Source of the DNA: Convolutriloba macropyga
Taxonomy: Eukaryota
Assembly: GCF_964194025.1 (NCBI RefSeq)
Contig: NC_134482.1
Coordinates: 18,786,001-18,850,000 of the forward strand
Reading direction: 5' to 3'
DNA: 64,000 nt
Below the pieces are notes generated by a model that saw nothing but the letters and a program-made list of their open reading frames with translations, had not been told where the DNA came from and did no database searches. Positions 15,881 through 64,000 of the stretch are shown here, one piece after another (position 1 is the stretch's first letter; every line of letters begins with the position of its first letter). The translations under genes were made by a program, and so were the position numbers.

Positions 15881-16718
15881 TTTTAGCCACGCAAAGACTA
15901 TTTTCATAGACAAAAAGCTCTTGGATTAACGAGCTTAAAATTTTTCTTGAAGGATAGGAGGACAACGGACTGATTGCTGGAGATAGCTTCTGTATATTTT
16001 GTAGTAGTAATAGTAGTACAGGATTTCGGATCTAGGCCCTCGGGTTTTTATTGTTTTCGGTTTTTGAATTAGATCATGAGTTGCGTCCATGAGTTTTCAT
16101 AGTGGATTGCAGCATCCACATAGTCAGAAAATTGTCCACGTGCATGTTTTCACCTCATCGTTAACGTTTTCGAAGTAGTGCCAATAAATTGTTAGCGGTT
16201 GCTTTAGCTGTCATATCAATAACTCGCGACATAATTGTAGAGTATCATAGTTCGTCTGAAAAAATTGCCGTCGGATTGTTTTGAGTCTGTTTCGGTATTT
16301 TGATTCCTTACTGCTACCTTGTGTATTGAACTGTACTTCACCAAAAAGCTTCATTTTTGCATGGTGTTTGTTGCTGAGTATCAATCCGAGAAGTAAATCG
16401 TGCAAAAGTAAATTCGAGCAGAAGAAAATTCGATATATCTTCTAGAATTCTGAATCATGTGTTTTGATTTATTTTTATTCTGATAGCTTCCGTGAATGTT
16501 TATATAGATATATCCTTAAGATAAGTTTCCGTAACTTTCGTAAATCGATACAATAGTTGAAATTGTTTGAAGCAAAACGTCCGATATGTCCCCTCAAATG
16601 CAAATTATCTTTTGATGACAGATTTTATCTCCCCATTATGAATTCATTATTTATGTCTTTTAGAGGATGGCTTCGCTTTCAATTGACAGTTTTTGAATCT
16701 GTTGATTTTAAGATTATC

Positions 16719-16988
16719 ATGATATCTTCTGGAGTAGAGCCGATGCAAATTGACGACGACGATCAAAATGACGGCGCCTCTCACGGTATAAACGATGCCT
16801 CAGATAGGCCATTTGGGAGTGGAGAATCGTTGGCCCCCGATTTTAAAGTTCAATCTTCCTCAATCGACCTTGATGCTCTTTCCCTGCAGTACTCTGAACT
16901 CTACCGAGTACATCGTTTGGTTTTCATCGCTGATCACTGTCCGGCTGTTCGAAGGGACGCTTTGATACTGGCGATTAAAGCAATTGAG
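16719..16988 (+). CDS. GPS1: COP9 signalosome subunit 1 (CSN1/COPS1), coding exon 1
   Basis: Reads MISSGVEPMQID...SIDLDALSLQYSELYRVHRLVFIADHCP. The donor is GAG|GTAATA at 16989 (phase 0). The ATG is preceded by an acceptor-like TTTTAAG ending at 16712. Confidence 0.9.
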
Positions 16989-22300: not shown

Positions 22301-25300
22301 GAGTCATTTCTGGCGAATTTTTTCTTATTAAAAATAAAACATTTTATTCAAAAAATTTTCTGAATGTAAGCCATGAATAGAACGAAGAACAAACTTGAGC
22401 AGCTCATAAATATGCAGTTCATACCCGGTTAGAATCTTATGCTTGACAAATATATCTTCAGAATGATCAGAGCGCCTACGAAAATAAATAAATTTAATAT
22501 TTTTTTTCTGAAGTAGATATATTTTCAAACTTGACGCATTTGAGCGACCGTAAACTAATACACCATATTGAACTACTGCATTTATGTTACTTTTATAATA
22601 TCTTATAAGTAATTTCCGCGGTACATAATGTCTAATCTAGTCATATTTTTCGAAGCGAACTGAAACTCCACGCCAAATTAGAACACGGTTTCCAAAAAAA
22701 CTAAATTCGGTCAATTTATCTCTTTTTCTGTTTCAATCCTGATCCGCATCAAGCGCGTGTAAGGTGGCTATTTTCTGGCAATCTACCGGCTATGTTTTAA
22801 GTTTATTTTATTTAGAATCATTTTTTGATAAACTTATTAAACAGCCTTTCATTGATTCATCTTGTGTGGAAAACTTTTCTTGGGAGGGTTTTGAATACAA
22901 TACGCTGAATGTAAATGAGTTATCACATCTTCAAGAGCTCGCCTGCTAAGGCCTGCTTACTTCTGGCCAATTCCCAGGCTCAAGATCTGTACAAAATCCT
23001 GCACTATGAGTAAGAAGTCGAGTGGAAGTTCCACATTATTCGGAAACACGCGAAGAGAGTTTCGTATTAGACGAAAGCCCTCAACAAATAGAAAATTTTG
23101 CAACAATTTTAAAAGAAAAAAATTTAAATGAAAAGCACAGCGAAGCAACCAACAAAAAGGCAACACTAGCGTTAGAAAGTTGTATTCGTCTGGGCCAAGT
23201 CCCGGTAGTCGGTGATTGTTTCTCTAGCAATTAAATTTGAGGTATTTTTTTTATTTCCTCACAGTCTTTCAGTATCAATAGGAGTAGGTGAAAAAATTAA
23301 TCAGCTTATCTTATTCCGCGGGGTCCTTCAAGATATCTAGGAATAGGATAAATAAGCTTCTTGTCTATTAAATTGCGCCGCAACATTCCGAAATGTCACA
23401 AAACGAAAAAAGCAGTACTGCAAAGTAACGCTGCCACCGACAAACAAATTACGAGCGTATCATGTAATACGACTGAAAAATAAAAAAATATTGTCATGGG
23501 AGCCGTTGAGTGATCCACTGGATAGAATAAGTCAGTTTGCATTTAATTTAGAAAATGCACCAAATAATATTGCAACCGTCCAAGCTGAAATCAAAAGCCT
23601 CAGAGCACACAGTGACGATGAACAAAATGTATCTGTACAAAAACAAGCTTGCTACGCTGAAGCCGTTAAAAGTACGGTCAAGTCAAACGGAACCATGGGT
23701 AAAAGAATCCCCTGTGTTCGAGAGCTTTCAGAGGGTAGTACCAATACAAGATTGGAACACATAAATATGGTCATCGATTATCATGAAATACAGGAAGTTA
23801 AACTAACCAGGGTATTAATGCTTGGCAAAGTAGATCGATCCAAAACAACACCATATATAATTGTCATCAACTTGGAAAATTCCTTTAGAAATACTCACTT
23901 TCAAAGAAGCGTATCAAACTTGACTATAAACCGGAAAACCAATTAATTTTTAGTTCAGAGTTTTAATCTTGAACGTTGCTATGTCAACAAACGATGCCCT
24001 ATTACGTCGGCAGCTGATTGAAACTGTTTTTAAACCCCAACTTTTTTGTATCAGAAATTTTGGAGTTAAATACGGGAAAACAACAGCTGGTTTATCGGAC
24101 GACACGGGATCGTCAATTTACTAATTGAAGTTACAATTAAGGTTCTAACGTTGTTAAATCTGAGATGCCGTACAATATTTGCGATTGCTCTGCCGACAAA
24201 GAATTGACATTATTTGAATCGCAGAAACGTGACTCACTCCCAAAATCTTCATTGTCACTCTTTTTCCTTGCCTATCAAGACTAGAGAAATTATCGAAATT
24301 CTGCAGTCATGAAAAGCAAACATGGAGGGGTGCTCAATGCAGTAGAAATGCTCTGAAACGCGAACTGCTCATTTAAAAAATGTGACGCCAGTTTTCCTGC
24401 TTCTAAAGACGAATAAACGGCTCTATCTTGATTGGTTTCTCCTATAACACGACTGAAGTTTTTATCGTTGGACAGAGAGCAAGATGCTTACGGTTCTTTT
24501 GGATCGTGAACAACTGAAAGCAACAAATATTTCATCTGTTATAATTACAGGTGCTATGAATTTTGCGAGGTCAGATTTGAATGTCAGCTAATGATTATGA
24601 AAATACCATCCATGAGTTTGACTTTAACTACACAATTGTTCTCACACTCAATTGGTTGTTTTTTTTACAATACGGAACTAATAACTCACTCCTTCATCGA
24701 CTCGTTAGTTGAAGATTACCAAATTAACTGAAAAAATCCGATCACCTTCCCTCATGCTAACGTCATTTTTGAGTGCCTTGTTCCATATGTTGCCACTGAC
24801 ATATATCGCCTCCAAAAAAGCAGATTAGGAAGCTTTTCAGTGGTATGTTTGGTGATAACTATGCCTTTCAACCCCAACCTCTTTGACAACCTAAATTTCT
24901 TGGCTCGATGAAAAATAAAACAGAAGTTTCCAAAAATAAAGAAAGAAAGAAAGAAATTATTTCTCACGAGTACAAAATATAAATCTATTAAATATAATTT
25001 ATTTATGAAGAGACTCGGAGGGGACAGACAACCGGACTATGTGTCCTCAAAATCCTGCCATTCGTAGTTGAACTTACTTGTGTAATAGTTGCTCAATAGT
25101 AAAAGAGAAAAAAAATGAGAAATTTAAATTTTTTTCGAATTTTTTTTCATGAGTTTTCTGTTCTTTTAATGGAAAATCAACCAAGAGCTTAACCATAGAC
25201 GACTATTAACAGCTACGGTTGTAGACGAGCCTTAATTGAGTTTACAAGAATTTTTTTTTGAAAGTTCAGAATTTTTCAATTTGCAACAGAATCGCAAATT

Positions 25301-28300
25301 TTTTTTAAATGATAGCCATATCTCCTGAAATATTGGTCCTAGAGGGGTCATTCTTTTTCACCAGAAAGCCAACTATTTTTGGGTACTCCTGTAGCATGCA
25401 GGCAAGGGGTATGGATTTTTTGGGTACCTATAAGGAAAAATTATATGACCAATTCGTCATTATGGAGAATATAGAAATCTTTCAATTTATGATAAAAATT
25501 ACTCAACTCTTTTGAATTTTGGTTTTCAGCATTATCGAATAGGTTTTGTTTGGCGAGGCAGTTGAACAGCTTTCTAGCACGGTACTTTACTGATAGTCTT
25601 TCAATTTTTTTCTTACAAATCGGTTCATGAAGGACATTCAGGGAGTCATTTCTGGCGAATTTTTTCTTATTAAAAATAAAACATTTTATTCAAAAAATTT
25701 TCTGAATGTAAGCCATGAATAGAACGAAGAACAAACTTGAGCAGCTCATAAATATGCAGTTCATACCCGGTTAGAATCTTATGCTTGACAAATATATCTT
25801 CAGAATGATCAGAGCGCCTACGAAAATAAATAAATTTAATATTTTTTTTCTGAAGTAGATATATTTTTTTCAAACTTGACGCATTTGAGCGACCGTAAAC
25901 TAATACACCATATTGAACTATTGCATTTATGTTACTTTTATAATATCTTATAAGTAATTTCCGCGGTACATAATGTCTAATCTAGTCATATTTTTCGAAG
26001 CGAACTGAAACTCCACGCCAAATTAGAACACGGTTTCCAAAAAAACTAAATTCGGTCAATTTATCTCTTTTTCTGTTTCAATCCTGATCCGCATCAAGCG
26101 CGTGTAAGGTGGCTATTTTCTGGCAATCTACCGGCTATGTTTTAAGTTTATTTTATTTAGAATCATTTTTTGATAAACTTATTAAACAGCCTTTCATTGA
26201 TTCATCTTGTGTGGAAAACTTTTCTTGGGAGGGTTTTGAATACAATACGCTGAATGTAAATGAGTTATCACATCTTCAAGAGCTCGCCTGCTAAGGCCTG
26301 CTTACTTCTGGCCAATTCCCAGGCTCAAGATCTGTACAAAATCCTGCACTATGAGTAAGAAGTCGAGTGGAAGTTCCACATTATTCGGAAACACGCGAAG
26401 AGAGTTTCGTATTAGACGAAAGCCCTCAACAAATAGAAAATTTTGCAACAATTTTAAAAGAAAAAAATTTAAATGAAAAGCACAGCGAAGCAACCAACAA
26501 AAAGGCAACACTAGCGTTAGAAAGTTGTATTCGTCTGGGCCAAGTCCCGGTAGTCGGTGATTGTTTCTCTAGCAATTAAATTTGAGGTATTTTTTTTATT
26601 TCCTCACAGTCTTTCAGTATCAATAGGAGTAGGTGAAAAAATTAATCAGCTTATCTTATTCCGCGGGGTCCTTCAAGATATCTAGGAATAGGATAAATAA
26701 GCTTCTTGTCTATTAAATTGCGCCGCAACATTCCGAAATGTCACAAAACGAAAAAAGCAGTACTGCAAAGTAACGCTGCCACCGACAAACAAATTACGAG
26801 CGTATCATGTAATACGACTGAAAAATAAAAAAATATTGTCATGGGAGCCGTTGAGTGATCCACTGGATAGAATAAGTCAGTTTGCATTTAATTTAGAAAA
26901 TGCACCAAATAATATTGCAACCGTCCAAGCTGAAATCAAAAGCCTCAGAGCACACAGTGACGATGAACAAAATGTATCTGTACAAAAACAAGCTTGCTAC
27001 GCTGAAGCCGTTAAAACTACGGTCAAGTCAAACGGAACCATGGGTAAAAGAATCCCCTGTGTTCGAGAGCTTTCAGAGGGTAGTACCAATACAAGATTGG
27101 AACACATAAATATGGTCATCGATTATCATGAAATACAGGAAGTTAAACTAACCAGGGTATTAATGCTTGGCAAAGTAGATCGATCCAAAACAACACCATA
27201 TACAATGGTCATCAACTTGGAAAATTCCTTTAGAAATACTCACTTTCAAAGAAGCGTATCAAACTTGACTATAAACCGGAAAACCAGTTAATTTTAAGTT
27301 CAGAGTTTTAATCTTGAACGTTGCTATGTCAACAAACGATGCCCTATTACGTCGGCAGCTGATTGAAACTGTTTTTAAACCCCAACTTTTTTGTATCAGA
27401 AATTTTGGAGTTAAATACGGGAAAACAGCAGCTGGTTTATCGGACAACACGGGATCGTCAATTTACTAATTCAAGTTACAATTAAGGTTCTAACGTTGTT
27501 AAATCTGAGATGCCGTACAATATTTGCGATTGCTCTGCCGACAAAGAATTGACATTATCTCTTTTTCCTTGCCTATCAAGACTAGAGAAATTATCGAAAT
27601 TCTGCAGTCATGAAAAGCAAACATGGAGGGGTGCTCAATGCAGTAGAAATGCTCTGAAACGCGAACTGCTCAATTAAAAAATGTGACGCCAGGTTTCCTA
27701 CTTCTAAAAAACGGTTCTATCTTGATTGGTTTCTCCTATAACACGACTTAAGTTTCTATCGTTGGACAGAGAACAAGATGCTTACGGTTCTTTTGGATCG
27801 TGAACAACTGAAAGCAACAAATATTTCATCTGTTATAATTACAGGTGCTATGAATTTTGCGAGGGCAGATTTGAATGTCAGCTAATGATTATGAAAATAC
27901 CATCCATGAGTTTGACTTTAACTACACAATTGTTCTCAAACTCAATTGGTTGTTTTTTTTTACAATACGGAACTAATAACTCACTCCTTCATCGACTCGT
28001 TAGTTAAAGATTACCAAATTAACCAAAAAAATCTGCGATCACCTTCCTATCCATGCTAACGTCATTTTTGAGTGCCTTGTTCCATATGTCGCCACTGACA
28101 TATATCGCCTCCAAAAAAGCAGATTAGGAATCTTTTCAGTGGTATGTTTGGTGATAACTATGCCTTTCAACCCCAACCTCTTTGACAACCTAAATTTCTT
28201 GGCTCGATGAAAAATAAAACAGAAGTTTCCAAAAAAAAATAAAGAAAGAAAGAATTTATTTCTCACGAGTACAAAATATAAATCTATTAAATATAATTTA

Positions 28301-41172: not shown

Positions 41173-43540
41173 TCTATTTGATAAGAAACTTCTCAATCCA
41201 TTAAATCGCCTTTACACGGATACTCTAGCAACAGTTTTCTTTGTATTTCATGATCGAGGAAAGCAAATGCTTTTTAAAACAAAAAATTAGAAGAGTTAAT
41301 TTTTTGATGTCTTGGTCTCTCTGCCAGCTCGGCCAATGAGTCATCCAATTTGGAGCCAGGTTTGCGGATGGGTATTGTCTTTGCCCGTTGTAATTCACTT
41401 GGGAGAAAACCTTTTTTTAAACCCATATTCATTAATCTTGTGAGACGCGATATAAGCTCAGGGGCAATAAATTTCAATAATATATTGCTTAGATGACTGT
41501 CTCCAGATGAGAACTTATTATCCGAGTCATTGAATATTTCCTGAACTTCTGGTTCATTCACGGGGAAGAAAAACATGAAAAATGAAAAACTCTCAGGAAA
41601 ATGAAGGACATTAGGGAGAGATACTTTAAGGTTTTTCACTTACAGAGCTAAAAAAATCGATCAGTATTTCAACAATTGTCAAAGGTGACGGTAAATCAGA
41701 GCACGTTACGTATTGTGAGAAAGCTGGCAGAGTATGGTCTTTAACGGATTGACCTTTTAAATCATTTAATGACTTAAATATTTGCCTTGAGTCTCCAATA
41801 CGAGATCGAAACCTCTTTTAATATTGATTTTTTGAGGTCTCCACCTCTTTGGCAAAATTTTCCCGCAGCTTTTTGCATTTTTTTTCATATTGTCAACATT
41901 AGGGTCCATCTTCGATTGTCTGTGCAATTTATTACGTTTGGAGCACAAACTTTTTCGCCTATTGGAATACCATTTAGCTCTTATTTCTGCACTTTGCCAA
42001 TGGAGAGAACTGGTATGTTACCTCAGAGACAACTTTATGGAAATAAGCAAATGAATCATTTTTGTGATTATTGTCAACTAGAAAATTCTGTGTTAACAGT
42101 AGTTCAGGTTGTAGAAAACCAATATCTCGAAAAATACAATTGCTCGTATATTAATGCCACAGGAAATGAAGATTCGGAACGGATCGGTTAAATTCTGATT
42201 TTCAGGTACTCCTGCTAAACTTTTGTATATTTTTTTGATAAAAAGTTTGTATTTTTTTGATAAAAAGTGAGCAAGGCAGGTGGAACATTCATCAATTACT
42301 CTGGTTGTTTTTTTCGACCAACATGTCAAATTCATTTGATTCGATGATGTTTATATACTGCTTCGTGAGATAAATTTTAACCAACATGTCTTAAAATCTC
42401 CAGACTGCTGTTGGTTTTGAACTTGGTATCTTTTCATGACACATCAGAATCCTCCAGGAATGCCATCTTTTTAGAGCTTGGAGGATTATAGCAGGAAAGT
42501 GAAGATAGAAGTCAGGACAGTGAAGATAGAATAATTTTTTTTCTGAAATTTCTGTTTCTTCAATCAAATTGACATCTCTATTTATTTTGATAGCACTACA
42601 TGTCCTAGAGTCACGAGCTTTAGAGGAAAATGATTATATTCTTTAATTATTTTTTAGCCAAGTTTCACTTAAGCAAATTATAGACGGTGGGGGCTAAAGG
42701 CTGTATACTAGTGCTACAAACTTAATTGTTTTTCTTCAGCGATCGCACATTCAAATGCTGTTTATAAAGGGTACTAAAATTGCGCAGTGCATTAACTGGA
42801 GATTTTTTTAAAGTTTCAAGATTATGAATGCTTTGTTAGTTTCTGGTTTCTTTTGCTGATCTTTGTTAATCAATATTTCACATTGGCGCTTCAATGTCTC
42901 AAGGATGTTTCTGCCAGTTTTTTTCTACCTCATCATGCTCATGTTTGCATTATGTCGACAAAATCTTGCAATGATTGGGCTTCCAGCCGGATCCCTCGAT
43001 GGCTGACGCTGGGAAATAGATAAACCTTCAATATTAAATGTTTTTCATAGCTTTCCAAATATCTACATTGGTTTTCAATGTGCAATCCGCGAACTTCTGC
43101 TCACTGTTCTCTGGAATTCGTGTGATTCGGTTGTTGTCGCGCCGGTTATAAGTTTCTAGTTCCTCAGCGTCGATGTTTTGAGATTGCAAAGCCTTTCTTG
43201 GAAACATGAATCTGCCGTAAATACATCCTGCACTTCATCCTTCACAGCTGCGATGGATTCTTCAATCATGTAGTTGGTAAATTTTTGGCAATATTTTTTG
43301 TATGGCATCCTCTATCCTTTGCATCGGCTCATTTTCGTCTTCTAAAATAGGATTTCAAGGCTCTTTTCTTATCAAGTGGTTTAACTGATGTAGGCGGAGT
43401 TTGGCCTTGATAACGGAGAACTGGTCGGGCAATCGAGTGTTCCAGACCAAAGGTATCATTAGTGTCGGTCTTTGTGCTAGCATCAATGTCTGCATTTTCA
43501 TCTCTGAAACTATTTAATTAGTTTATCACAACAATTAGGC
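41173..43540 (-). mobile_element. Older, degraded Crack-like LINE (ORF1, APE, RT N-terminus)
   Basis: ORF 41274-41639 reads 'NKFSSGDSHLSNILLKFIAPE...AKTIPIRKPGSKLD', with 'IGDSRQIF' near 41790 and APE remnants at 42100-42800. It starts with SL-like copy E. Confidence 0.8.
43510..43540 (-). other. SL-like motif copy E (GCCTAATTGTTGTGATAAACTAATTAAATAG)
   Basis: 30/31 match to the consensus, followed by TTTCAGAG-ATG. Confidence 0.8.
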
Positions 43541-44026: not shown

Positions 44027-44297
44027 AGTACCAACAATGTTGAGATGTACAAAAAGCTCCATTTGCTCCTGAATGAAACTGCTTCCACTGCCAATGGGAA
44101 TCAAAATGGCTCCTCAGTTGAAAACTCTGAACGACCCAACCCACAATTTGACAAAGTCTGGGTAGACACTTGCCTCCGGACATCCAACTCAAGATATGAA
44201 AAATTGGACGCTGATTTGCGGAGTTACAAGTCGAACTCTATTAAGGAGAGTATTCGCAGAGGTCACAATGACATGGGAAAGCACTTTCTTAACACAG
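44027..44297 (+). CDS. GPS1: CSN1 coding exon 2
   Basis: TTTAG|STNNVEMYKKLH...EKLDADLRSYKSNSIKESIRRGHNDMGKHFLNT|GTAATG. The 'SIKESIRRGH' motif is diagnostic for CSN1. Confidence 0.95.
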
Positions 44298-44591
44298 GTA
44301 ATGCAGATCTGAAAATGAAGTAATCTATTTTGAACTACTTGCCTTGCAGTTAAAGACTCGGGTAAATTAAAAGATGTCCCCCCGTTTTTAGATAGAAACA
44401 TCTGACTTCATAAAAAACATGTGGTAATAGGATTGCTTTGATTCTGGGGTGAGGTGGGGGTACAAACGGAAAAGATAAGGAAGTTTTCTTCTTCATAAAA
44501 TCCGACAAACATAGGCACCATTCAACCAATCAAACCCCCCCTTTTTTTTAAAAAAAATAAATTTTGGTTGCAATCAACAGCAGAAATAGAG

Positions 44592-44950
44592 GGTTCTACT
44601 TCTTTTCACCCCTATTCATTTAACGCCCTACCATTTAACCCCTCTATCATTTCGCCCATCTATCATTTCATCCCCCCAATTAGCAGTCGACATTAAAGGC
44701 ATGTTTTGTCAATTAAGAGGATAAATTAATCCCACGTTCGGTTGTGATAGTTTCATATCAAGTCCCACGGGCCGCGGAGTCAGGGCAATGGCCCGCGAGG
44801 CATGACCAAATGATTATATTGCTAATTTTTAATGAGAAAGATTAAAATCGGGGTTAAAGGATAGAGGGGTTAAATGATACAGGGGTGAGTAAATGGGGGT
44901 TAATTGATAGGGGGTTAGTTAAATGAATAGGGGTGAAAAAGCGGGACACC
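44592..44950. mobile_element. Mutator-like MITE with 9-bp target-site duplication in CSN1 intron 2
   Basis: GAAATAGAG flanks both sides (44583-44591 and 44951-44959). Inverted ends are 'ttttcacccctattcatttaac' and 'gttaaatgaataggggtgaaaa'. Confidence 0.8.
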
Positions 44951-45164: not shown

Positions 45165-45420
45165 GTGATGTGCAGGCTGCTCTCAAGTGTTTCACGAGAA
45201 CACGTGACTACTGCACTTCGAGCAAACACATTCTTGACATGTGTTTCAATGTGATCGGAGTAAACATAATGCTGAAGAATTGGTTTCATGTGCAGAGTTA
45301 TGTGTTAAAGGCAGAACAGACCCAAGAACAGTCCACGCAAGAGACACTTCCTAAAAAAGTGCACAATAAAAATGCCTGGCTCAGATGTGCTACTGGAGTG
45401 TCAGAGTTGGCATTTAAGAG
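45165..45420 (+). CDS. GPS1: CSN1 coding exon 3
   Basis: CTCAG|GDVQAALKCFTRTRDYCT...NWFHVQSYVLKAEQ...|GTTTGC. Splice phases 1 and 2 are consistent with the neighbouring exons. Confidence 0.95.
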
Positions 45421-45845: not shown

Positions 45846-46560
45846 GTATAGAGCAACGGCAAAAGCATTCATCGGAATTTCGCCAGAAAACTGCCCGGAT
45901 GATTTCCTCTCACCGTCTAATGTCGCTCTGTACGGAGGTCTGTGTGCTCTGGCCTGCTACAACCGAGACGAGTTAAAAGACCACGTTCTATCAAATGCCC
46001 ATTTCAAACAGCTTCTGGAAACTGAGCCTCAATTACGTGAAGTAATCACGTCTTTCCATGGTTCCAATTACCACAGATGTTTCAAAATTATGGACGAAAT
46101 GCGAAATAACTGGCTGTTGGATATATATTTATCAAGTCATGTTGACACTTTGTATAACATGATCAGAGAACGAGCTTTATGTCAGTATTTCGGATCTTAC
46201 TCTTCAATTGATATGCGAAAAATGGCGGCTGCTTTCAACACTTCTGTGGATGAATTACAAGAAGAATTATCTCTTTTGATACAAAATGACGCTATCAAAG
46301 GTCGCATTGACTCACACAACAAAATACTTTTTGCAAAAGAGACTAACTACAGAACTGTAATTATGGATAAAGCGCTGGAACTAGGCCAAGAGTTTGAGAG
46401 GAAAAGTAGCGTTATGTTAGCTAAGTGTGCTCTAGTCAAAGCGAAAGTTGTCGTTGGTGGAAAACAGGGTGGGGGTCGTAGCGAACAACAGGCGACTTCC
46501 AGTTCATCACAAATGAGAAACGGAAACTTTTCGGGTGGTCATATGATTTTTGGCTCCTAG
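45846..46560 (+). CDS. GPS1: CSN1 coding exon 4 (PCI domain)
   Basis: Contains 'SPSNVALYGGLCALA', 'LLDIYLSSHVDTLYNMIRERALCQYF' and 'MAAAFNTSV..GRIDSHNKIL'. The four exons sum to 1512 nt, in frame. Confidence 0.96.
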
Positions 46561-46707
46561 ATACTCATATAAACTAGATTTATAACACGGTAGGAACCCA
46601 TTTTCAGTTAAAATTGAGCTAAATAATGGAATCATTGCTTTGAATGATCAGTTTGAACCATTGATTGGTTGGTTGGTTGTTCATTTTGCGTTAGTCGATT
46701 AAATTGG

Positions 46708-46828
46708 AATAAAATGTTTTATCTAAAGTGCTGAATAATTTGATCGACGTTAAACGATCGTTTCGTCTTGTATCGAGCTCAAATATTTGATTAGCAATTA
46801 AGTGTGTCGTGTATTGTTCCTGTTTCAG
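46708..46828 (+). promoter_or_regulatory. AATAAA poly(A) signal of CSN1, followed by a U-rich spacer and an unpaired 3' splice acceptor (TGTTTCAG)
   Basis: AATAAA at 46708-46713, 'attgttcctgtttcAG' ending at 46828, and the next ATG at 46911. Confidence 0.55.
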
Positions 46829-46910
46829 ATTACAGTCTGTTTTGTATCATCGTTTTGTAGACATTTCGTATCAAAATTTTGTAGTATTTCACGCGCCATT
46901 ACACACGTGA

Positions 46911-47316
46911 ATGAAACCCAATTTTAGCTCAGGATTTGACCAGTCTTCATCAAATAAACAAAACGACCTAAACAACCCTCCATCGAAATCTGGAAGTTTA
47001 AGGAATCATTCCCGATGTAGCAGTGGAGAAGTGGGGAGTTTGATTGCTGCACCTGCCCCCCAAAGTGGGCTTTCCCAGGCGCACGATGAGCTGACAGTGC
47101 GTGAAATACTTTCATCCCTTTTCCCGCCATTCAGGGAAACTGGGCCCGTTTTGTTAGCTCAGAGCGATGCCTTAATGCAGCGAGAATTTGGCGGTCAGCT
47201 CGAAAAATTCTTGAATGATTTTCTATTACAAGCAAAGCCTATGCTCCAATGGATTAGAGACGATGCGAAAAATGCTCTGTTGAATCGAGAGTTTTGTCCC
47301 GCTATTCTTCCCGAAG
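46911..47316 (+). CDS. PLEKHG4/PLEKHG4B/ARHGEF40-family RhoGEF, coding exon 1
   Basis: 'ILSSLFPPFRETGPVLLAQ...FLNDFLLQAK' matches the family N-terminus (LY/FPPF..T.P.LL.Q). The donor is GAAG|GTAAG. Confidence 0.8.
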
Positions 47317-47354
47317 GTAAGACTTAAGGTCATAATGAAAAACTTCCCTTATGC

Positions 47355-48930
47355 TTCTAGTTATACTGCTTACATGACATTTATTGCTCCTTCACTATTA
47401 AAGTCAAATTCGAAGCATATAAGTAAGTGACAGTACTTGTTTAGGTCGATTCGAACAAAATTTGAAAACACGAAGAGATCAAATTTTTACATTACTCGCA
47501 TTACTCTGAAGGAAATTTTGAGTTTAAAATTTCGTTCACTTTACTAAGTGGCTTATGCGACTTTTTCGGCGCAGTTTTTTAAGTCTCAATGTTATCTTTG
47601 TAGGCTGAAGTCTTCTCTTCTATATTTATGTTTGGGGTCATTTTTTACCGCTTTAAGCATACACTAAAATCTTTGATACGAATGTAAGATGTTTTTGTTA
47701 TTTTGCCGTATAAGCTTTTTAGCGGTTTTTTTTGTTCGCATGCCAGTTGATTTTCCTAAAGAAATTTGGCCAAATTAATTTTTTTTGCCTGTTTTGATCT
47801 TATCTGCCAATTTTCATTTGTTTTATGCTTCTCAATATTTTTTCTCGCTCAACTGCTTACTTAGAAGTGAACCATAGATGCTGTTATTAAAAAGATACAA
47901 TTGAATATTTGATATTTCAGTCTTCGCTGAACTGAGTTGTCGTCACTTTTTTGCCTTGAGTTTTTGCTTTTTTCGTGCTGCAGAATATATCTTTGGTCAC
48001 ACTTGTATTACTACTCTCTGAAAATGGCTATCTTTGCGCTCAAATTAAGTTGCATGATTGGTATTGGGGCGTTTTCTTTGAAGATATGTTAATACTTTCT
48101 CATTTTGATGTCAAATTAAGTTGCGGAAGCAATTATTGTCAAGGTGTTGGGCGTTTTCAAAATTTGCAAAATTGTAGCTTCACCGTTTTGACTTTTCGAG
48201 TGACATATAGCAGTGGAAAAATTTTTGCTTCACCGTTTTGACTTTTCGAGTGACTTGACTTTTTCGTTTTGCGTGGTACAAATTTCTCTTGTTCACAAGT
48301 GTCAACAGCTGACCTCAAATGGCGGAAGCTCAATACTAGAAGTCAAATGAAAAGTGCGCCAAAATTGATATATTTTTTTAAATTAAGTTTCGTTAGTGGT
48401 TATAGGGGTAAGTAATAACCTCCTATGACGTTATTTGAAGCCCCCCTTAACGTCCCCCGCAGATGAAGCCGGCTGCAATAGATTAGAGCTCCCACAAGTC
48501 GTTGGAGAGCAATTCTTCGACGTTATTTGGTTAGGTTTATACTGCTTACATGACAATTGCTCCCTCACTTTTAAATATAGTTAAGTGACCGCACTTGTTT
48601 AGGAATTCGAAAACACGCGGGGAAGAGTAATTTTTTACACTATTCCGCTTTACTCTGAATGAGAGTAAAAAGTTTTCTTCACTTTAATGAGCGGCTTTTT
48701 CAATGCAGTTTTTAGTCTTTATGCTATTTAGTCTTATATATAGTTTGGGGTCAATTTTGACCACTTTAAGCTTATACTATGATTTTTGATTTTTATTATT
48801 TTGCCGGATCAGATTTTTAGCGGCTTTCTCATTCGAATGCAAGTTGTTTTTGCTTAAGAAAATGTACCAAATTAAATTAATTTTGGGTCTGTTTTTGAAT
48901 GTTTTCTGACCGCGTTTTTTATCCTTCTGA
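47355..48930. repeat. Two diverged direct copies of a ~0.4-0.5-kb repeat (~47360-47850 and ~48538-48930)
   Basis: Both begin 'ttatactgcttacatgaca' and share 'ttactctgaa', 'tttggggtca' and 'tttttagcgg'. A separate ~140-bp repeat at ~48415-48535 recurs at ~55105-55265. Confidence 0.7.
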
Positions 48931-51627
48931 ATATTTTTTTGCTCAAAAAAAATAAGGCTGGTGGCTGTTTTTTTCATTTGCCTTTGCGGCAATTTCATTT
49001 GAGTTCTATAACTTTAACTCCATTTTTTCCCATCTAATAGACTTTCCATTTCTTTTTCTATTTTTTTTTTAAATTCTTTGTTTATTAATAGCCGCCCTCA
49101 TCTTCTCAGCCAGCTATTATTGCGCTCGTATTTTTTTTTACTTCGTCAAACTTTTTTTCGCTTTACCATTTTGCCGCTTTTTCGACATTTTGCGTGAAAT
49201 CTTTTTGACTTCTCTAGGCTAGTTTCTCTCTTCTCTCATTCTGCTAAAAGTGAATTTGAACATCAGTTGCTAAGCAAAGCAATTCAAAATGAACAGAGTC
49301 GGTATAAAAAATTGAAGTCAGAAATAGAAACGGGATAAACCCATAAAGCCCAATTTTAGATGCCCGCTATTTGAACGTCGTTCCTATAAGTCTTAGTTAC
49401 CACCTCTAATGCTTATTGGTGTTGATAGTTGCCCCTGTAGCCTCTCTCTAAGAAACAGAAGTATGTTCAACTACGAAATGCCATCAAAATAAATCGGACT
49501 TAAAAAATGTTTTTGTACAAAAATTTTTTTTTTCAATATATTCTATTCTTTCAATCCCAATCATGCTTATTGGAATCAACGGCGGCTATTTTCCTGCAAT
49601 CTGCCGGATATGTTTGTGTTCGTCTGATTGTTAAATTAATCTAAATCTGTTTTATTGTATTAGTGTTTGTATTATTGGAGTTATTTGAACGTTTTGTTGG
49701 CCTATTTTTTACTGAAAGAAAAGATTTTTTTGTTTTGTTTGGGATATCTACGTTTAGTGTTTTGTCGGATGTATTGACTGTCACTGAATTAGTTTGAAAG
49801 GATTTTTAGAAAAATATTTGAAAAAGGTTCGTTTTTGTTCTCTGTTCGCATAGAATCAATATTTTTGGATAGTTCTTCAAAATTTTGTTTTTTAAGGCTG
49901 CAAAACTGAGCGGAGCTATATTGCGGTGCTCTTGGTTTTTACAAGAATTTTAATTGTATTGCTGTGCTGTAAAAGGTAATTTTTTTCACGCTGGAGTAGA
50001 GAGAAAGTGGAGCTGGAATAAGCGGAGCGAAATTTGAGAAGATATAAGGAGTGATTTTATCAAAAGTGCTTTTTAAAGTGGAGTGGGAGGATGGTGTTGA
50101 AACAGATTTTGGTTTCTTGAACGCGTTTTTTCTGCGTGCGGCAATTTGAATTCTGTTTTTTTTTCTGTTGCTTTTGTTTGCGTTACGAATACTTTTAAAT
50201 GCAATAGGTTTGTTCAAACAATGCTTAGTTGCACTTGTTTAAGCCATCAAATTGCAAAAAATGGTTTTCAAAAACTTTGACGCTATTTATCTTCATGAAT
50301 TAATTGCTTTTTGGTTTTTTGTTTTTTTGTTGTTTTGTTATCTTATCTCATCTCTGATCGGTCTCATTGTCTGTATTGCGTCTTGTTTGAATTAGTTTCC
50401 TGATTTGAAATTGATCGTTTAAAGACATTGACACCAACTCTTTTCGAAAAGTTTTGGCGGTTTTTTTTTCATCTTTTGTTTTTTTTTGCTGTATCGCTTA
50501 ATCTTATTATGAACATTTCTGTGAGGCTCTCTTCTGTTTTCCATTTTGATCACTTCAAAATTTTTTTCCACATCACGAAAAGTTTTCACTACTTTGGCTC
50601 CACTTAAAGTTTTTTTTCGGAATTTTGCCCTTCGTAGCTTTTTGTTGTTTTGTCACTTAGTCGCATTAATTAATGTTCTCTGTGGCTTTTTAATTTGGCA
50701 TGCTGGAGCTTTTGTAGGGTTTCAAAGTTGCATGTGTTATCGAATTTGACAAAGACTTTTTCCAAATATGAGTTTTTTTGGATTATGACCGTTTTGTTAT
50801 TGTTTTTTCTTGTGCTGTCGGTAAGTCTCATTAATGATAGGCCTTCATTGCTCTCCCACTAGGCATATAATGGATTTATATAATGGTATATATAAAGGTA
50901 TAGGTTTATAGCTAATAATTTAATTGGCTTCGACACCATTTGTTTTCGACTAATTTTGGGCTTTTGATTGTTGCCGCTTTTATTGCTACTTTCGTTGAGT
51001 GTTCCCCAATCGTTTTCTTCAATGTTGACACACTCTGATAGAAATTGCAATAGATGTTGAAGAATTCAATTTCTATTTGCGTGTTTGAATGACTTTGATG
51101 CCCCTTATTTTCAATGACATTCGTAAAATTTTTTGACGAATGTCGTTTGTGTTCTTTTGTTTTTTCTGCAGTCGTTTTCTACAATTTCGGCGTTTGCTTT
51201 CTAAGCAGCCATTGTGTAAATGTGTTCTCAAGACCTTGTTGGAGATGATAACCTCGATAACAGTATTTTTCTGAAAGAATTGAAATGAATTTGTTTTGTT
51301 GGTTTTAAAGTGTTCTGTTTTTGTAGTTTTTGTTTTTTTTCGTGGACGTCTTGTTATTTATGTTGTTTGATATCGGAGACTGATATTTTTCTCTTCAGTT
51401 ACTTCAATTCTTTGATTTGTAATTCAGGATTTGTCCTGCTATGTTTTTTGTTCAGTCGTCTGACGCTATTTTTTGTTTTACATTTGTTCTAGAATATTTG
51501 TCGCTTCACCTTTTTGGTCACTCTTTCAATTTTGATTCTTTCTTTTTTTCGTGACCCAATTTGCGTGCATTCAAAAATTGTGTCTGTTGCTAAATTAAAA
51601 TGGAACGTGTGATGAACTGTAATAAGG

Positions 51628-52752: not shown

Positions 52753-53067
52753 GCTGGCCGTTAGTTTTCAACAAAGGAGTTGTGGTGAACTTGTTCGATA
52801 TCTCAGAATCGCATCTGCAATCGGGTGATTTCTACCTTATCCTTGCCAAAGACAAATTGACCAATCAAACACAAGCAGGCAACTTGCCTTCCACCAATGA
52901 GAACTTGGACCTATTTGTGAAGTTTTTCGCACGTGGGACTGTTCATTCGTTCAAAGTTGGAGCTGAGAATTTCGAAGATCTGTTTTCGGAGGAATTTATG
53001 CACAGTGTTCCATTAGAAATGCACCAGGATGTTGTACTGCAGAATGTCCTCTGCTCTTCTAACAGAG
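52753..53067 (+). CDS. PLEKHG4/ARHGEF40-family RhoGEF, coding exon 2
   Basis: TTTCAG|GWPLVFNKGVVVNL...LQSGDFYL (family motif GWPL...GDFYL). Donor AG|GTATAT, phase 1-1. Confidence 0.85.
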
Positions 53068-53879
53068 GTATATCGCTTAGAAGTTGTCAATACCCAATGC
53101 CAAAATACCCAAATATACACAATATTTTAATTTTTGGCACATTGGGTTAATTGTCATGTAACCGGCTTAGAATTTAGCTTATTAACTTTTTAGTCAACTC
53201 TTTCAATTTTTACCCCCCCCCCCCCCCCGCCTCTCCAAATACGCAACTGTGCGAGGTCTTCAAATTCCCCGTTACTATTTTACCATTAGTGTTTTTATCG
53301 TATCGTATTATGAAAGTCAATCTTTGTTGTCTTGTCATAATTGATTGATTCACGGCAGCGTTTCCTCTTTTTAGTTCTTTTTTTTTCGCTTTTAATTCGC
53401 TTGAAAAAATGGTTGTTAGTTTATTCACATTGAGTATTGTTAACTGAGCACAAAGAGCGTATGAGCGTTTTTTGAGGGCATTTTGGTTAAATCGAGTTAA
53501 GCGAAGTGAGCGTTTGAAAATCTGGTCTCTTTCAAATAACACAGTTTAAAAGCTGTTCATATTCTACTGCTGCTTTTGTGTGTAAACTTGATAAAAATGT
53601 GTTTCAATTGACTTCTCAGTTTAGGTAGATTAATGGTATGCAAAATGGTTACGTGAATGGGTATCGAAAAGAGGGGGCGATTGAGACGATCGTTTATAAA
53701 GAGGATTGGAGATTTTATTATGGATATTTCGGATGTTCTTTTCGATCTGTTGGAGTGTAAGTCAAATATCTGTAATCGGATACCTTTATCAATGTGTTAT
53801 TGACGTCAATAACATCGGACAAAAAACCGGTAAAAGAGCATCAAAAAAGACGTCACCGTCTAAAACACTTGTTGCTATG

Positions 53880-60753: not shown

Positions 60754-60993
60754 GCATTGTGAATTATTCGTGGGCGGATGTTGTTCTCACCAAAACAGCT
60801 GGATGTTCCTCAGACGAGGGGGCATCTGAGAGTGGGGGAGGCAACTCCTATTTTTACGACCGGGTTCCATTCGGTTCCAGGCCTCGAACTTCCCTCAAGA
60901 ATGCGACATCAGCTCTGTCTTCGAGTCTTCCCGATTTGACCTTATCTGGCATTGACGTGGAACTTACTAATTATTCATCCTCTATTGCTCAGG
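60754..60993 (+). CDS. RhoGEF coding exon 3
   Basis: TTTCAG|GIVNYSWADVV...SSIAQ|GTAAG. 240 nt, phase 1-1, GC-richer than its flanks. Confidence 0.75.
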
Positions 60994-61941: not shown

Positions 61942-64000
61942 CAAATCCCTCCTCAAATTCAACACGACAATGTTCCATCAACTCGATTAATGTTCAAAAT
62001 TCTTGCACAGCCACGATAGAACACCATATAGAACCCAAAATAGCCACTCGGAACCCGATCACGCCTCTAAGAAGGTCAACCTCGATGCGAAAGGCGGACT
62101 CGTTGACTAGATCGATATTAGCATTAAATATGGTTAGTCACCGAAGATCAGCTACGCCGTCGTACATGAGTGGCGACAGCTCATGTAATAGTACTTTGAC
62201 ATCAGGAGGAGGTCTTGTTGATAATTCGTCTTCATTCGGTGGATCCACGAGTTCAATTGACCAATCAGACGACAGTGCGCATGATATTCGTAAATTGTCG
62301 GTCGGATCGGCGGGTGCGTTGCCCATTCTCGCCCGAAGTACAAGTCGAAAGAAACAGTTTACAGCCGAGTTCAGCAGTTCAACGAGCTCTTTAAGCGATT
62401 CGGTTGCAAATCAAGCTTTAGATTTGAATTTCGAGCTGTTAGATTGTGGAGCACTGAAGTTAACGTGTGGCGAAGATTCGCATAAATCACGAATTGTGGA
62501 AGTTTTGGCGAACAATCCAATATTGAACATTACAGAATCACAAGAAATTGCCAGACTTATTTGTTATTTCCACAGTTGTTTATCCGCAGTAGAGCAAGCT
62601 AGAGGTCTGTGTTTAATTGTCGACGGTCGAGTTACCAGAAAAAATTCACTGGAAAAAGTGGCAGAGGCGTTTCGCGTGGCTGAAGAACTGTCAGTTGGTG
62701 CTATTTCGAGAATCATTATTTTGTGTGGAAATTCTGGCAGTACTTTATTTCATTCTATCAATTTTAGCCTAGATCCATCCAAAGTTGAATTCTTCAATAA
62801 AGCAGACGCGTTTTATAACGCAATTCCCAAACAGCAACTAACGAGTACGTTCAATGGCAATTTGTCCAATCATCACGAGGAATGGGTCAGGTTCAGAATG
62901 AAGTTAGAGCCCTATGTGAACAGCTGTGAGTTAGCTTTGACCCAAATCGGAAAGTGCAAGAAAATTTACAATCACAACTTTTTACCCTCAAAACTGAAGG
63001 AATTGAATCGGGTTTTGAAGGAACACCAAACAGCAATCACAAAGTTAAGAAACGAGCAAGCTCTCTGCAGCAACAACAATCAGATTTTAGCGCGATTGAG
63101 AGAAGAAGCGACTGTTATTTCCGAGTTCCCAGACGCTTACGATGCTGTCGATTCTGCCGAACGTCTGCAAATGAGACTCAATTCTGAGTTTTGTGAACTT
63201 GAAGCTCATTCCAGGAGTTACATCACAGCTATCGAAGCGGCCATTGCGGCTAGGCAGTTCACAGATGAATATCGGAAAATTCTGAGCTGGTTCCAAAAAC
63301 GAGGCGAAGTTTTTCTCGAGGACAGTTTGTTGGGAGACAATTTACAATCATTAATGAATGCTGAGAAGGAATTTGACAGGTTCAACTACCACGCTATGAA
63401 GTATTGTGAGAAGGCAGGAGATATAATTGACGAAGCTTCTCAACTCAACAATCATGATGTAAGAACGAAATCAGATCATTTGAAGAACATTGTTCAATCC
63501 TTTGTCGCTAAAATGGACGCGAGAAAAACCCAAATTGAAAATATGCTGCAGATTTACCAACACATTGATCGGGCAATTGACTGGGCGCTTAATGGAATGC
63601 ACTTTTTGGCCAAAATGAATATGGATCGTGTCCACAGCGAAGCAGGTTGTCTGAAGTTGCTGAAAAATCTGGAAAGATATCAAGCCAAATATCCTCAAAT
63701 TACGAACGAAATGTTTGATAGAATGGAAGCCTTGAGCATCGATCTTGCCAATGAAAATTTACATCAGCAGTTAAAGTTTGCGAGAGAACGTTGTAAAAAT
63801 ATAGACGGTCTTTTTGCGAAACGACAAGCATCAATTACCAAAAGCTTAGACGTATTTCGATGTGTCCCAGTTTACGTCAACAAAACTCATCAGAATAAAC
63901 GATCGAATTCGGCTCTTCATCAAGTGGTAGCATTGCCTGAAATTGAGAGTTCGAGTGCTGCTGAAGATACGGACGGAGATATGCTGGATTCGGAACCCTC
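61942..64000 (+). CDS. RhoGEF coding exon 4 (Ser-rich region, Sec14/CRAL-TRIO domain, spectrin-like repeats); runs off the window
   Basis: Follows TTTTTCAG and reads 'GLCLIVDGR' and 'IPKQQLTSTFNGNLSNHHEEWVRFRMKLE', then helical repeats. It is absent from the ORF track, consistent with no stop before the window end. Confidence 0.85.

What the first reader, a model, noticed from the sequence alone, without database searches (positions are those of the whole stretch)
46560..46911. CSN1 and the RhoGEF look like a eukaryotic operon resolved by trans-splicing
Seen: the genes are on the same strand with 350 bp from stop to start, although their introns are up to 27 kb. AATAAA at 46708 is followed about 115 nt later by a pyrimidine-rich acceptor TGTTTCAG (46828; an alternative TTTTGTAG at 46860) with no obvious donor. 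The spacer has no TE. Known: nematode and tunicate operons have a short gap between the 3' end of one gene and the trans-splice site of the next, about 100 nt in C. elegans. Inference: this is a polycistronic unit, consistent with the SL-like motif found in the same window.
Basis: inference. Interest (0 to 1): 0.75.

Follow-up and report, generated by a model that had tools for sequence, protein, structure and literature searches.

The report
Candidate acoel CSN1–RhoGEF operon
In the acoel worm Convolutriloba macropyga a housekeeping gene (CSN1) ends 350 bases before a large RhoGEF gene on the same strand. A conserved leader-type splice acceptor lies between them and two related worms keep the same tight pairing, which fits a trans-spliced two-gene operon, but no RNA data could be reached to show a shared transcript.

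Summary
CSN1 (503 aa) stops at 46558-46560. A 1811-aa DH-PH RhoGEF starts at ATG 46911 on the same strand. The 350-nt spacer is single copy and holds ATTAAA/AATAAA at 46698-46713 and TGTTTCAG ending at 46828.

New evidence:
- The genome has large tandem arrays of canonical spliced-leader (SL) RNA genes.
- The CSN1-to-RhoGEF pairing is kept in two other acoel species, with spacers of 570 and 216 nt.
- Against the nearer species, spacer conservation is confined to the acceptor (TTTCAG|ATTAC) and the 5' UTR behind it.

Against an obligatory operon: two further relatives have the RhoGEF, or CSN1, without the partner within about 20 kb. There the RhoGEF still has a strong acceptor before its ATG.

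No RNA evidence was reachable; the four runs that hold the stretch are genomic DNA. SL trans-splicing of the RhoGEF is likely (about 0.7). Co-transcription with CSN1 is plausible but unproven (about 0.4).

SL trans-splicing is published for a sister acoel; I found no report of operons in acoels. This scan has already flagged several similar candidate clusters elsewhere in this genome, so this is one more instance, not a first sighting.

The parts
16719..16988 (+). CSN1 exon 1 (ATG 16719). Acceptor-like sites lie just upstream: ACAG ending 16687 and TTTTAAG ending 16712.
   Evidence: tblastn against L001 exon 1; sequence; the only stop-free spliced model gives 503 aa
44027..44297 (+). CSN1 exon 2, after a 27-kb intron
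45165..45420 (+). CSN1 exon 3
45846..46560 (+). CSN1 last exon (PCI domain), stop TAG 46558-46560
   Evidence: Pfam PCI 7e-20
46676..46693 (+). Block in the CSN1 3' UTR shared with species C (L002), containing TTCATTTTGC
   Evidence: 14/18 identical; weak on its own, with 33 of 300 shuffles giving a shared 10-mer
46698..46713 (+). Candidate poly(A) signals of CSN1: ATTAAA 46698-46703 and AATAAA 46708-46713
   Evidence: sequence; function inferred, no 3'-end reads
46714..46809 (+). Putative intercistronic stretch (or outron or promoter). Unique sequence with no block conserved in the other species.
   Evidence: the equivalent stretch is the most polymorphic part of the spacer among three close copies of species B
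46810..46828 (+). Best candidate SL trans-splice acceptor: pyrimidine-rich tract plus TGTTTCAG, with the AG ending at 46828
   Evidence: TTTCAG|ATTAC is identical in L001, L019 and L020, and CTTCAG|ATT is present in L002
46829..46910 (+). Putative 5' UTR of the RhoGEF (82 nt, no upstream ATG). Conserved blocks at 46833-46848 and 46873-46890. Alternative acceptors TTTTGTAG ending 46860 and TTTGTAG ending 46884.
   Evidence: All six 10-mers shared with L001 lie in 46823-46884; 0.65 expected, 1 of 300 shuffles reaches six
46911..47316 (+). RhoGEF exon 1 (KIAA1755_N-type N-terminal domain), donor GTAAGA at 47317
   Evidence: P0011 mapping; homologues carry PF27628 in the precomputed Pfam listing
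52753..53067 (+). RhoGEF exon 2
53657..53756 (+). Alternative first coding exon of the shorter annotated isoform (P0010, 1604 aa)
60754..60993 (+). RhoGEF exon 3
61942..64000 (+). RhoGEF exon 4 (spectrin-like region). It runs off the window; the DH-PH domains lie beyond the end.

Best explanation
CSN1 and the RhoGEF form a tightly linked, conserved same-strand pair. Its most likely mode of expression is a two-gene, SL-resolved operon.

Proposed mechanism:
1. Transcription starts upstream of CSN1 and runs through both genes.
2. The CSN1 mRNA is released by cleavage and polyadenylation shortly after ATTAAA/AATAAA (46698-46713).
3. The RhoGEF mRNA gets its capped 5' end when the 31-nt acoel spliced leader is added at the conserved acceptor TTTCAG|ATTAC (AG ending 46828), 82 nt before ATG 46911.

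Shown here: the anatomy, the SL RNA genes, conservation of the acceptor and 5' UTR, and conserved linkage in three species.

Inferred: use of that acceptor by the SL (about 0.7) and co-transcription of the two genes (about 0.4).
For: - SL machinery is present. 2026 matches to the leader plus GT against 0 in the control, in 1.1-1.8-kb tandem arrays. They have a GTAAGT donor, a U-rich Sm-like stretch and two stem-loops (z = -5.9). The leader is identical to the first 31 nt of the 32-nt published S. roscoffensis SL, where 30.2% of genes are trans-spliced (PMC9911081).
- The spacer is only 350 nt, unique and TE-free, in a locus where introns reach 27 kb and are full of LINEs.
- The same order and strand are kept with spacers of 570 nt (L001, L019, L020) and 216 nt (L002, L003).
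- Against L001, spacer conservation is restricted to the acceptor and the bases behind it: 6 shared 10-mers against 0.65 expected, reached by 1 of 300 shuffles.
- Among three close copies of species B, the stretch from the branch/pyrimidine tract to the ATG has one variable position. The roughly 100 nt in front of it is the most variable part. So no constrained promoter block is visible between the poly(A) signal and the acceptor.
- The distance from poly(A) signal to acceptor is about 115 nt here, about 95 nt in L002 and about 160 nt in L001. This matches the scale of nematode intercistronic regions, from my own knowledge of C. elegans operons.
- The spacer has no donor site, so a cis 5' exon is unlikely.
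Against: - There is no RNA evidence at all. Runs X1-X4 are genomic; their contigs run straight through introns and the spacer. No transcript-derived proteins of close relatives were found.
- In species D (L004, L005, L009) the RhoGEF has no CSN1 within about 20 kb upstream. It still has a textbook acceptor (TACTAAC ... TTGCAG) 36 nt before its ATG, so there the gene evidently works from its own promoter.
- In species E (L007, L008) CSN1 has no RhoGEF within about 20 kb downstream.
- I found no report of operons in acoels.
- The RhoGEF is a long gene with 5-8-kb introns and an annotated alternative first exon, which is atypical for a downstream operon gene.
- TTTCAG also resembles an initiator-like motif, and each single motif is close to chance level.
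Confidence: 0.4

Rival explanations
1. Two separate transcription units. The RhoGEF has its own compact promoter in the spacer or in the CSN1 3' end. Its short outron is removed by SL trans-splicing at the conserved acceptor. The tight linkage is inherited microsynteny, not co-transcription.
For: In species D the RhoGEF lacks an upstream CSN1 yet keeps a strong acceptor 36 nt before its ATG, so an own promoter plus trans-splicing is a working arrangement for this gene. Species E has CSN1 without the RhoGEF downstream. About 30% of genes in a sister acoel are trans-spliced, and that paper makes no mention of operons. An annotated alternative first exon at 53657 shows the gene has more than one 5' end.
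Against: Only about 100-160 nt lie between the likely CSN1 poly(A) signal and the acceptor. Nothing in that stretch is conserved between species, whereas the neighbouring 5' UTR is. It is the most polymorphic part among close copies. In a genome this rich in transposons, an untouched spacer of 216-570 nt in three species suggests more than neutral microsynteny.
Confidence: 0.33
2. No trans-splicing here. The RhoGEF is transcribed from a conventional start site in the spacer. The TTTCAG/TTTGTAG motifs are chance matches or core-promoter (initiator-like) or 5' UTR elements.
For: Single motifs are near chance: TTTCAG within 100 nt 9%, YTTYAG 20%. TCAGAT resembles the arthropod initiator TCAGTY (my own knowledge). 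The ATG-free zone starts at 46717, well upstream of the acceptor. About 70% of genes in the sister acoel are not trans-spliced.
Against: The acceptor has a pyrimidine-rich run-up in each species: 15 of the 20 upstream bases are pyrimidines in the window. A branch-point-like TACTTAC or TACTAAC precedes it in L001 and L004, though none was noted in the window or L002. A CAG or TAG acceptor sits before the ATG in all four RhoGEF loci and in both CSN1 loci examined. The exact TTTCAG|ATTAC junction is conserved.
Confidence: 0.17
3. The acceptor is used in cis. Either a non-coding 5' exon lies further upstream, or read-through CSN1-RhoGEF chimeric transcripts splice from a donor inside CSN1.
For: The acceptor is genuine-looking and conserved. 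The annotation shows alternative 5' exons for this gene.
Against: There is no GTRAG donor anywhere in the spacer. Any upstream exon would have to lie inside the CSN1 gene. The annotated long isoform starts its CDS at 46911 with no upstream coding exon.
Confidence: 0.05

Closest known systems
SL trans-splicing in the acoel Symsagittifera roscoffensis (Martinez et al. 2022, PMC9911081)
   Same: The published 32-nt SL has the same first 31 nt. Here those 31 nt are followed by a GT donor in tandem SL RNA gene arrays. The acceptor sits shortly before the start codon.
   Different: That paper reports the share of trans-spliced genes (30.2%) but does not describe operons. Here the question is whether two specific genes share a primary transcript, and no RNA was available.
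Caenorhabditis elegans operons (SL2-type; Blumenthal and colleagues; my own knowledge, see the Lasda & Blumenthal 2011 review cited in PMC9911081)
   Same: Same-strand genes, about 100 nt between the upstream poly(A) signal or site and the downstream trans-splice acceptor, and unrelated gene functions.
   Different: Nematodes use a dedicated SL2 and a U-rich element for downstream genes. This acoel genome shows one leader sequence, and I looked for no second SL or Ur-like element. The genes here have very long introns.
Single-SL polycistrons of tunicates (Ciona, Oikopleura) and flatworms (Schistosoma mansoni, Macrostomum lignano) (my own knowledge)
   Same: One SL serves both monocistronic and downstream operon genes. 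Intergenic gaps are short. The operon is recognised by an SL acceptor close behind the 3' end of the upstream gene.
   Different: Tunicate intercistronic gaps are usually much shorter (often near zero). Those cases rest on EST or RNA-seq evidence, which is missing here.

Membership tests
SL-resolved metazoan operon | The organism has SL RNA genes and SL trans-splicing | tested here: met
   Exact 31-nt leader plus GT in tandem arrays (2026 hits, 0 in control), GTAAGT donor, Sm-like U-run, two stem-loops. Trans-splicing itself is published only for the sister species.
SL-resolved metazoan operon | Adjacent genes on the same strand with a short, repeat-free gap | tested here: met
   350 nt, single copy
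SL-resolved metazoan operon | The downstream mRNA carries the SL at an acceptor just upstream of its ATG | tested here: inconclusive
   A conserved acceptor is present. No RNA reads were reachable: the runs found are DNA.
SL-resolved metazoan operon | One primary transcript from the upstream promoter spans both genes | not testable with these tools
   Needs nascent, nuclear or long-read RNA, or RT-PCR across 46560-46911
SL-resolved metazoan operon | No independent promoter or TSS between the genes | tested here: inconclusive
   No conserved block upstream of the acceptor, and that stretch is the most polymorphic. This is only indirect; no CAGE or chromatin data.
SL-resolved metazoan operon | Gene linkage conserved in related species | tested here: inconclusive
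   Kept in three species with gaps of 350, 570 and 216 nt. Absent within about 20 kb in two others.
COP9 signalosome subunit 1 (CSN1/GPS1) | RPN7-type helical repeat followed by a PCI domain; orthology to animal CSN1 | tested here: met
   Pfam PCI 7e-20 plus RPN7 tail. The L001 orthologue of the last exons (76-77% identical to the window's last exon) gives named best hits that are animal CSN1 at 42-51% identity. Four-exon model of 503 aa.
Dbl-family RhoGEF (KIAA1755_N-type N-terminus, spectrin-like region, DH-PH) | DH (RhoGEF) domain followed by a PH domain | tested here: met
   P0011: PF00621 4e-29 at 1301-1469, PF22697 1.6e-28 at 1486-1589. These domains lie beyond the window end. Exon 1 homologues carry PF27628 KIAA1755_N in the precomputed listing.

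The most novel reading that the evidence does not exclude
This is a genuine bicistronic operon, conserved across several convolutid acoels. It would be among the first documented operons in Xenacoelomorpha and would show that SL-resolved polycistronic transcription also operates in this early-branching or contested bilaterian lineage, even in a large, transposon-rich genome with 27-kb introns.
Probability: 0.4. Interest if true: 0.6.

Novelty: new member of a known kind. Interest (0 to 1): 0.4.

Why it matters
SL trans-splicing and operons have arisen, or been kept, patchily across animals. Whether acoels, whose leader was described only in 2022, also package genes into operons is open in the literature I could search. 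A conserved pair with a mapped candidate acceptor and poly(A) signal gives a precise, cheap test: one RT-PCR, or one look at existing directional RNA-seq.

If it is positive, together with the other candidate clusters this scan has flagged in the same genome, it would extend operons to Xenacoelomorpha. It would also matter for gene annotation in acoel genomes, where merged or truncated models arise at such junctions.

If it is negative, it shows that very tight, conserved same-strand spacing in an otherwise bloated genome can exist without co-transcription.

Tried and rejected
- RNA reads. The look-up of sequencing runs returned only four runs of one study, kind unknown. Read laying showed contigs running unbroken through introns and the spacer at 40-70x, so they are genomic DNA. 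No SL junctions, poly(A) ends or splice joints could be read.
- Transcript contigs through the protein collection. Searches with exon 1, the exhaustive representative search, the CSN1 C-terminal half and P0011 residues 1-320 gave only genomic ORFs of related acoels. None gave a transcript-derived protein of a close relative, so no 5' UTR with a leader could be inspected.
- Annotated gene record. The record for P0011 is withheld because it belongs to the window's own genome, so annotated UTR limits were not available.
- Retrocopy search. I looked in G000 for a processed retrocopy of the RhoGEF 5' end that might carry the leader as a DNA fossil of trans-splicing. Only the locus itself matched.
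- P0004/L006 is a 36%-identical KIAA1755_N protein from an unrelated annotated eukaryote. It says nothing about linkage and was dropped.
- Naming the related assemblies. A paper search for GCA_013332895 found nothing, so the species stay as letters B-E.
- The SL-like motifs inside the window as support for this operon: rejected. All five lie on the minus strand; four overlap TE features flagged in earlier scan notes. They show that the leader exists, not that this gene receives it.
- The bacterial promoter/terminator scan was not used, as it does not apply to an animal genome.

Full report
**What the window is.** Earlier notes of this scan name the genome as the acoel Convolutriloba macropyga. 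That agrees with a 1.176-Gb assembly and the published genome note (PMC13650328). GC content is about 36% and the introns are crowded with LINE-type ORFs.

**Checking the observation.**
- CSN1 is a four-exon gene of 503 aa: 16719-16988, 44027-44297, 45165-45420 and 45846-46560. This is the only stop-free spliced model. It is supported by tblastn against a related locus and by Pfam PCI/RPN7.
- Intron 1 of CSN1 is 27 kb. The stop is TAG 46558-46560.
- The next ATG-headed ORF on the same strand starts at 46911, so the spacer is 350 nt.
- That ORF is exon 1 of a RhoGEF. The NCBI/UniRef protein P0011 (1811 aa) sits in the same 90% cluster as the window's ORF and begins with it. It maps to window exons 46911-47316, 52753-53067, 60754-60993 and 61942 onward. 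It has DH and PH domains at residues 1301-1589, beyond the window end.
- A shorter annotated isoform (P0010) uses an alternative first coding exon at 53657-53756.
AATAAA is at 46708-46713, with ATTAAA at 46698. TGTTTCAG ends at 46828. TTTTGTAG ends at 46860. A third TTTGTAG ends at 46884. The spacer has no GTRAG donor.
- The spacer is unique in the genome. It sits at single-copy depth in four DNA runs, while nearby intronic repeats reach 10^5-10^6.
- Taken singly the motifs are not significant. TTTCAG within 100 nt is expected 9% of the time, and AATAAA within 350 nt 23%.

**The leader exists in this genome.** The S. roscoffensis SL is published (PMC9911081). Its first 31 nt followed by GT match G000 2026 times with up to 2 mismatches, against 0 for the reversed control. 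Most matches lie in tandem arrays with 1.1-1.8-kb periods on one contig. One unit reads leader|GTAAGT, then a U-rich Sm-like stretch, then a GC-rich hairpin. It folds into the canonical two-stem SL RNA shape (z = -5.9).

The five SL-like motifs inside the window are all on the minus strand, and four of them overlap TE features flagged in earlier notes. They show the leader exists but say nothing about this gene pair.

**Comparative evidence.** The exon 1 peptide found three homologous ORFs in other assemblies, all tagged KIAA1755_N. I call the window's species A and the others B to E.

| Species | Loci | Arrangement | Gap, CSN1 stop to RhoGEF ATG |
|---|---|---|---|
| A | window | CSN1 then RhoGEF, same strand | 350 nt |
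| B | L001, plus close copies L019 and L020 | CSN1 then RhoGEF, same strand | 570-572 nt |
| C | L002, L003 | CSN1 then RhoGEF, same strand | 216 nt |
| D | L004, L005, L009 | RhoGEF only | no CSN1 within about 20 kb upstream; retroelements and a tRNA-like SINE instead |
| E | L007, L008 | CSN1 only | no RhoGEF within about 20 kb downstream |

- In all of these loci a downstream exon carries RhoGEF/PH domains or matches the window's large RhoGEF exon.
- Species B is 70% identical to the window in exon 1 and 84% in the large exon. Species C is 60% and 79%. Species D is 56% and 70%, which makes it the most distant.
- The linkage is therefore conserved in a subgroup, not universally. Paralogy in D or E cannot be excluded.

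**Where the spacer is conserved.**
- Between the window and species B, the spacers share six exact 10-mers. The expectation is 0.65, and 1 of 300 dinucleotide shuffles reaches six.
- All six lie at or behind the candidate acceptor: TTTCAG|ATTAC, CTGTTTTGTA and AATTTTGTAGTA.
- Species C has CTTCAG|ATT followed by a similar TTTGTA/TGTAG stretch, plus a further TTTGCAG directly abutting its ATG.
- Species D has a textbook TACTAAC ... pyrimidine tract ... TTGCAG 36 nt before its ATG.
- Among three close copies of species B, the roughly 115 nt from the branch/pyrimidine tract to the ATG show one variable position. The roughly 100 nt in front of that hold the densest cluster of SNPs and indels.
- CSN1 itself has an acceptor just before its ATG: TTTCAG 5 nt upstream in species B, and ACAG or TTTTAAG in the window.
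- The pattern therefore is a conserved 3' splice site and 5' UTR, with an unconstrained stretch between the CSN1 3' end signals and that site.

**RNA evidence.** None could be obtained.
- The only runs holding the stretch are from one study. Their contigs run unbroken through introns and the spacer at 40-70x, so they are genomic.
- No transcript-derived proteins of close relatives appeared in any protein search.
- The annotated record of the window's own genome is withheld.
- No retrocopy of the RhoGEF 5' end exists in G000 that might have preserved a leader junction.

**Interpretation.** The conserved acceptor with no donor in reach, in an animal with abundant SL genes and a sister species where 30% of genes are trans-spliced, makes SL addition to the RhoGEF mRNA likely. 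I put it at about 0.7, most probably at 46828|46829.

Whether the pre-mRNA starts at the CSN1 promoter is the real question.

*For an operon:*
- The gap is very short and transposon-free in a bloated locus.
- It is preserved at 216-570 nt in three species.
- The distance from poly(A) signal to acceptor is about 95-160 nt.
- No conserved or constrained sequence lies where a promoter would have to sit.

*Against an operon:*
- Two relatives lack the linkage, and in one of them the RhoGEF keeps its acceptor. That shows an own promoter plus outron is a viable arrangement for this gene.
- The RhoGEF is long, has large introns and an alternative first exon.
- I found no published operon in acoels or Xenacoelomorpha.

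My estimates:

| Reading | Probability |
|---|---|
| Operon | about 0.4 |
| Own promoter plus SL trans-splicing | about 0.33 |
| Conventional start site, no trans-splicing | about 0.17 |
| Cis-spliced upstream exon or read-through chimera | about 0.05 |

**Relation to what is known.** It would work like nematode, tunicate and flatworm operons: 3' end formation of the upstream mRNA coupled to SL trans-splicing of the downstream one. With a single leader, it is closest to the tunicate and flatworm type. Membership in that class rests on two features I could not test: the SL on the downstream mRNA and a shared primary transcript. I do not file it as a proven operon.

This scan has already noted several comparable candidate clusters elsewhere in this genome. 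Those are leads, not independent proof.

**Verdict.** It is a good, precisely testable operon candidate, strengthened by conserved synteny and a conserved acceptor, and tempered by loss of linkage in two relatives and the complete lack of RNA evidence.

Noticed in passing
window 20183-27291: Three tandem copies (periods 3308 and 3345 nt) of a unit encoding a near-identical 151-aa ORF (MSWEPLSDPLDRISQ...) with companion 70-75-aa ORFs, inside CSN1 intron 1. A recently amplified tandem repeat or element of unknown kind.
   Followed up: no
window 43509-43540 (minus strand): A further SL-like copy (2 mismatches to the S. roscoffensis leader) on the minus strand, about 500 nt before CSN1 exon 2. It was not among the earlier notes listed for this window and was not itself examined; by analogy with the other SL-like copies it may mark a leader-bearing retroelement.
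   Followed up: no
window 16680-16718 and L001 2770-2786: CSN1 itself has acceptor-type sites just before its ATG: ACAG and TTTTAAG in the window, TTTCAG 5 nt upstream in species B. The upstream gene of the pair is probably trans-spliced too.
   Followed up: partly
window 53657-53756: Alternative first coding exon of the annotated shorter RhoGEF isoform (P0010). Its ATG has the same ACGTGA-ATG context as the main start at 46911. Several upstream ATGs lie between the nearest acceptor-like TCTCAG (ending 53619) and this ATG, so the model may be weak.
   Followed up: partly
window 47324/47325: An 18-nt insertion polymorphism directly behind the exon 1 donor region (intron 1) is seen in two of four DNA runs, together with many SNPs. 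The samples carry divergent haplotypes.
   Followed up: no
window 44564-44945, 48193-48383, 48957-49500: Short intronic stretches with summed contig depth of 10^4-10^6 in all four DNA runs, meaning extremely abundant repeats. They flank the single-copy CSN1 exon 3-4, spacer and RhoGEF exon 1 block.
   Followed up: no
L004 9426-9506 (minus strand): A degenerate tRNA-like sequence (probably a SINE) lies about 500 nt upstream of the RhoGEF ATG in species D, next to LINE and LTR-type ORFs. This is where CSN1 sits in the other species.
   Followed up: partly
G000 contig C9, about 23.14-23.78 Mb and 62.06-62.13 Mb: Very large tandem arrays of SL RNA genes (unit 1.07-1.8 kb) in both orientations. There are 2026 matches genome-wide with up to 2 mismatches.
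   Followed up: partly
L001 8424-9431: In species B, CSN1 exons 3 and 4 are fused into one exon and intron 1 is about 100 nt, against 27 kb in the window. Intron loss and size differ sharply between close acoels while the CSN1-RhoGEF gap stays short.
   Followed up: partly
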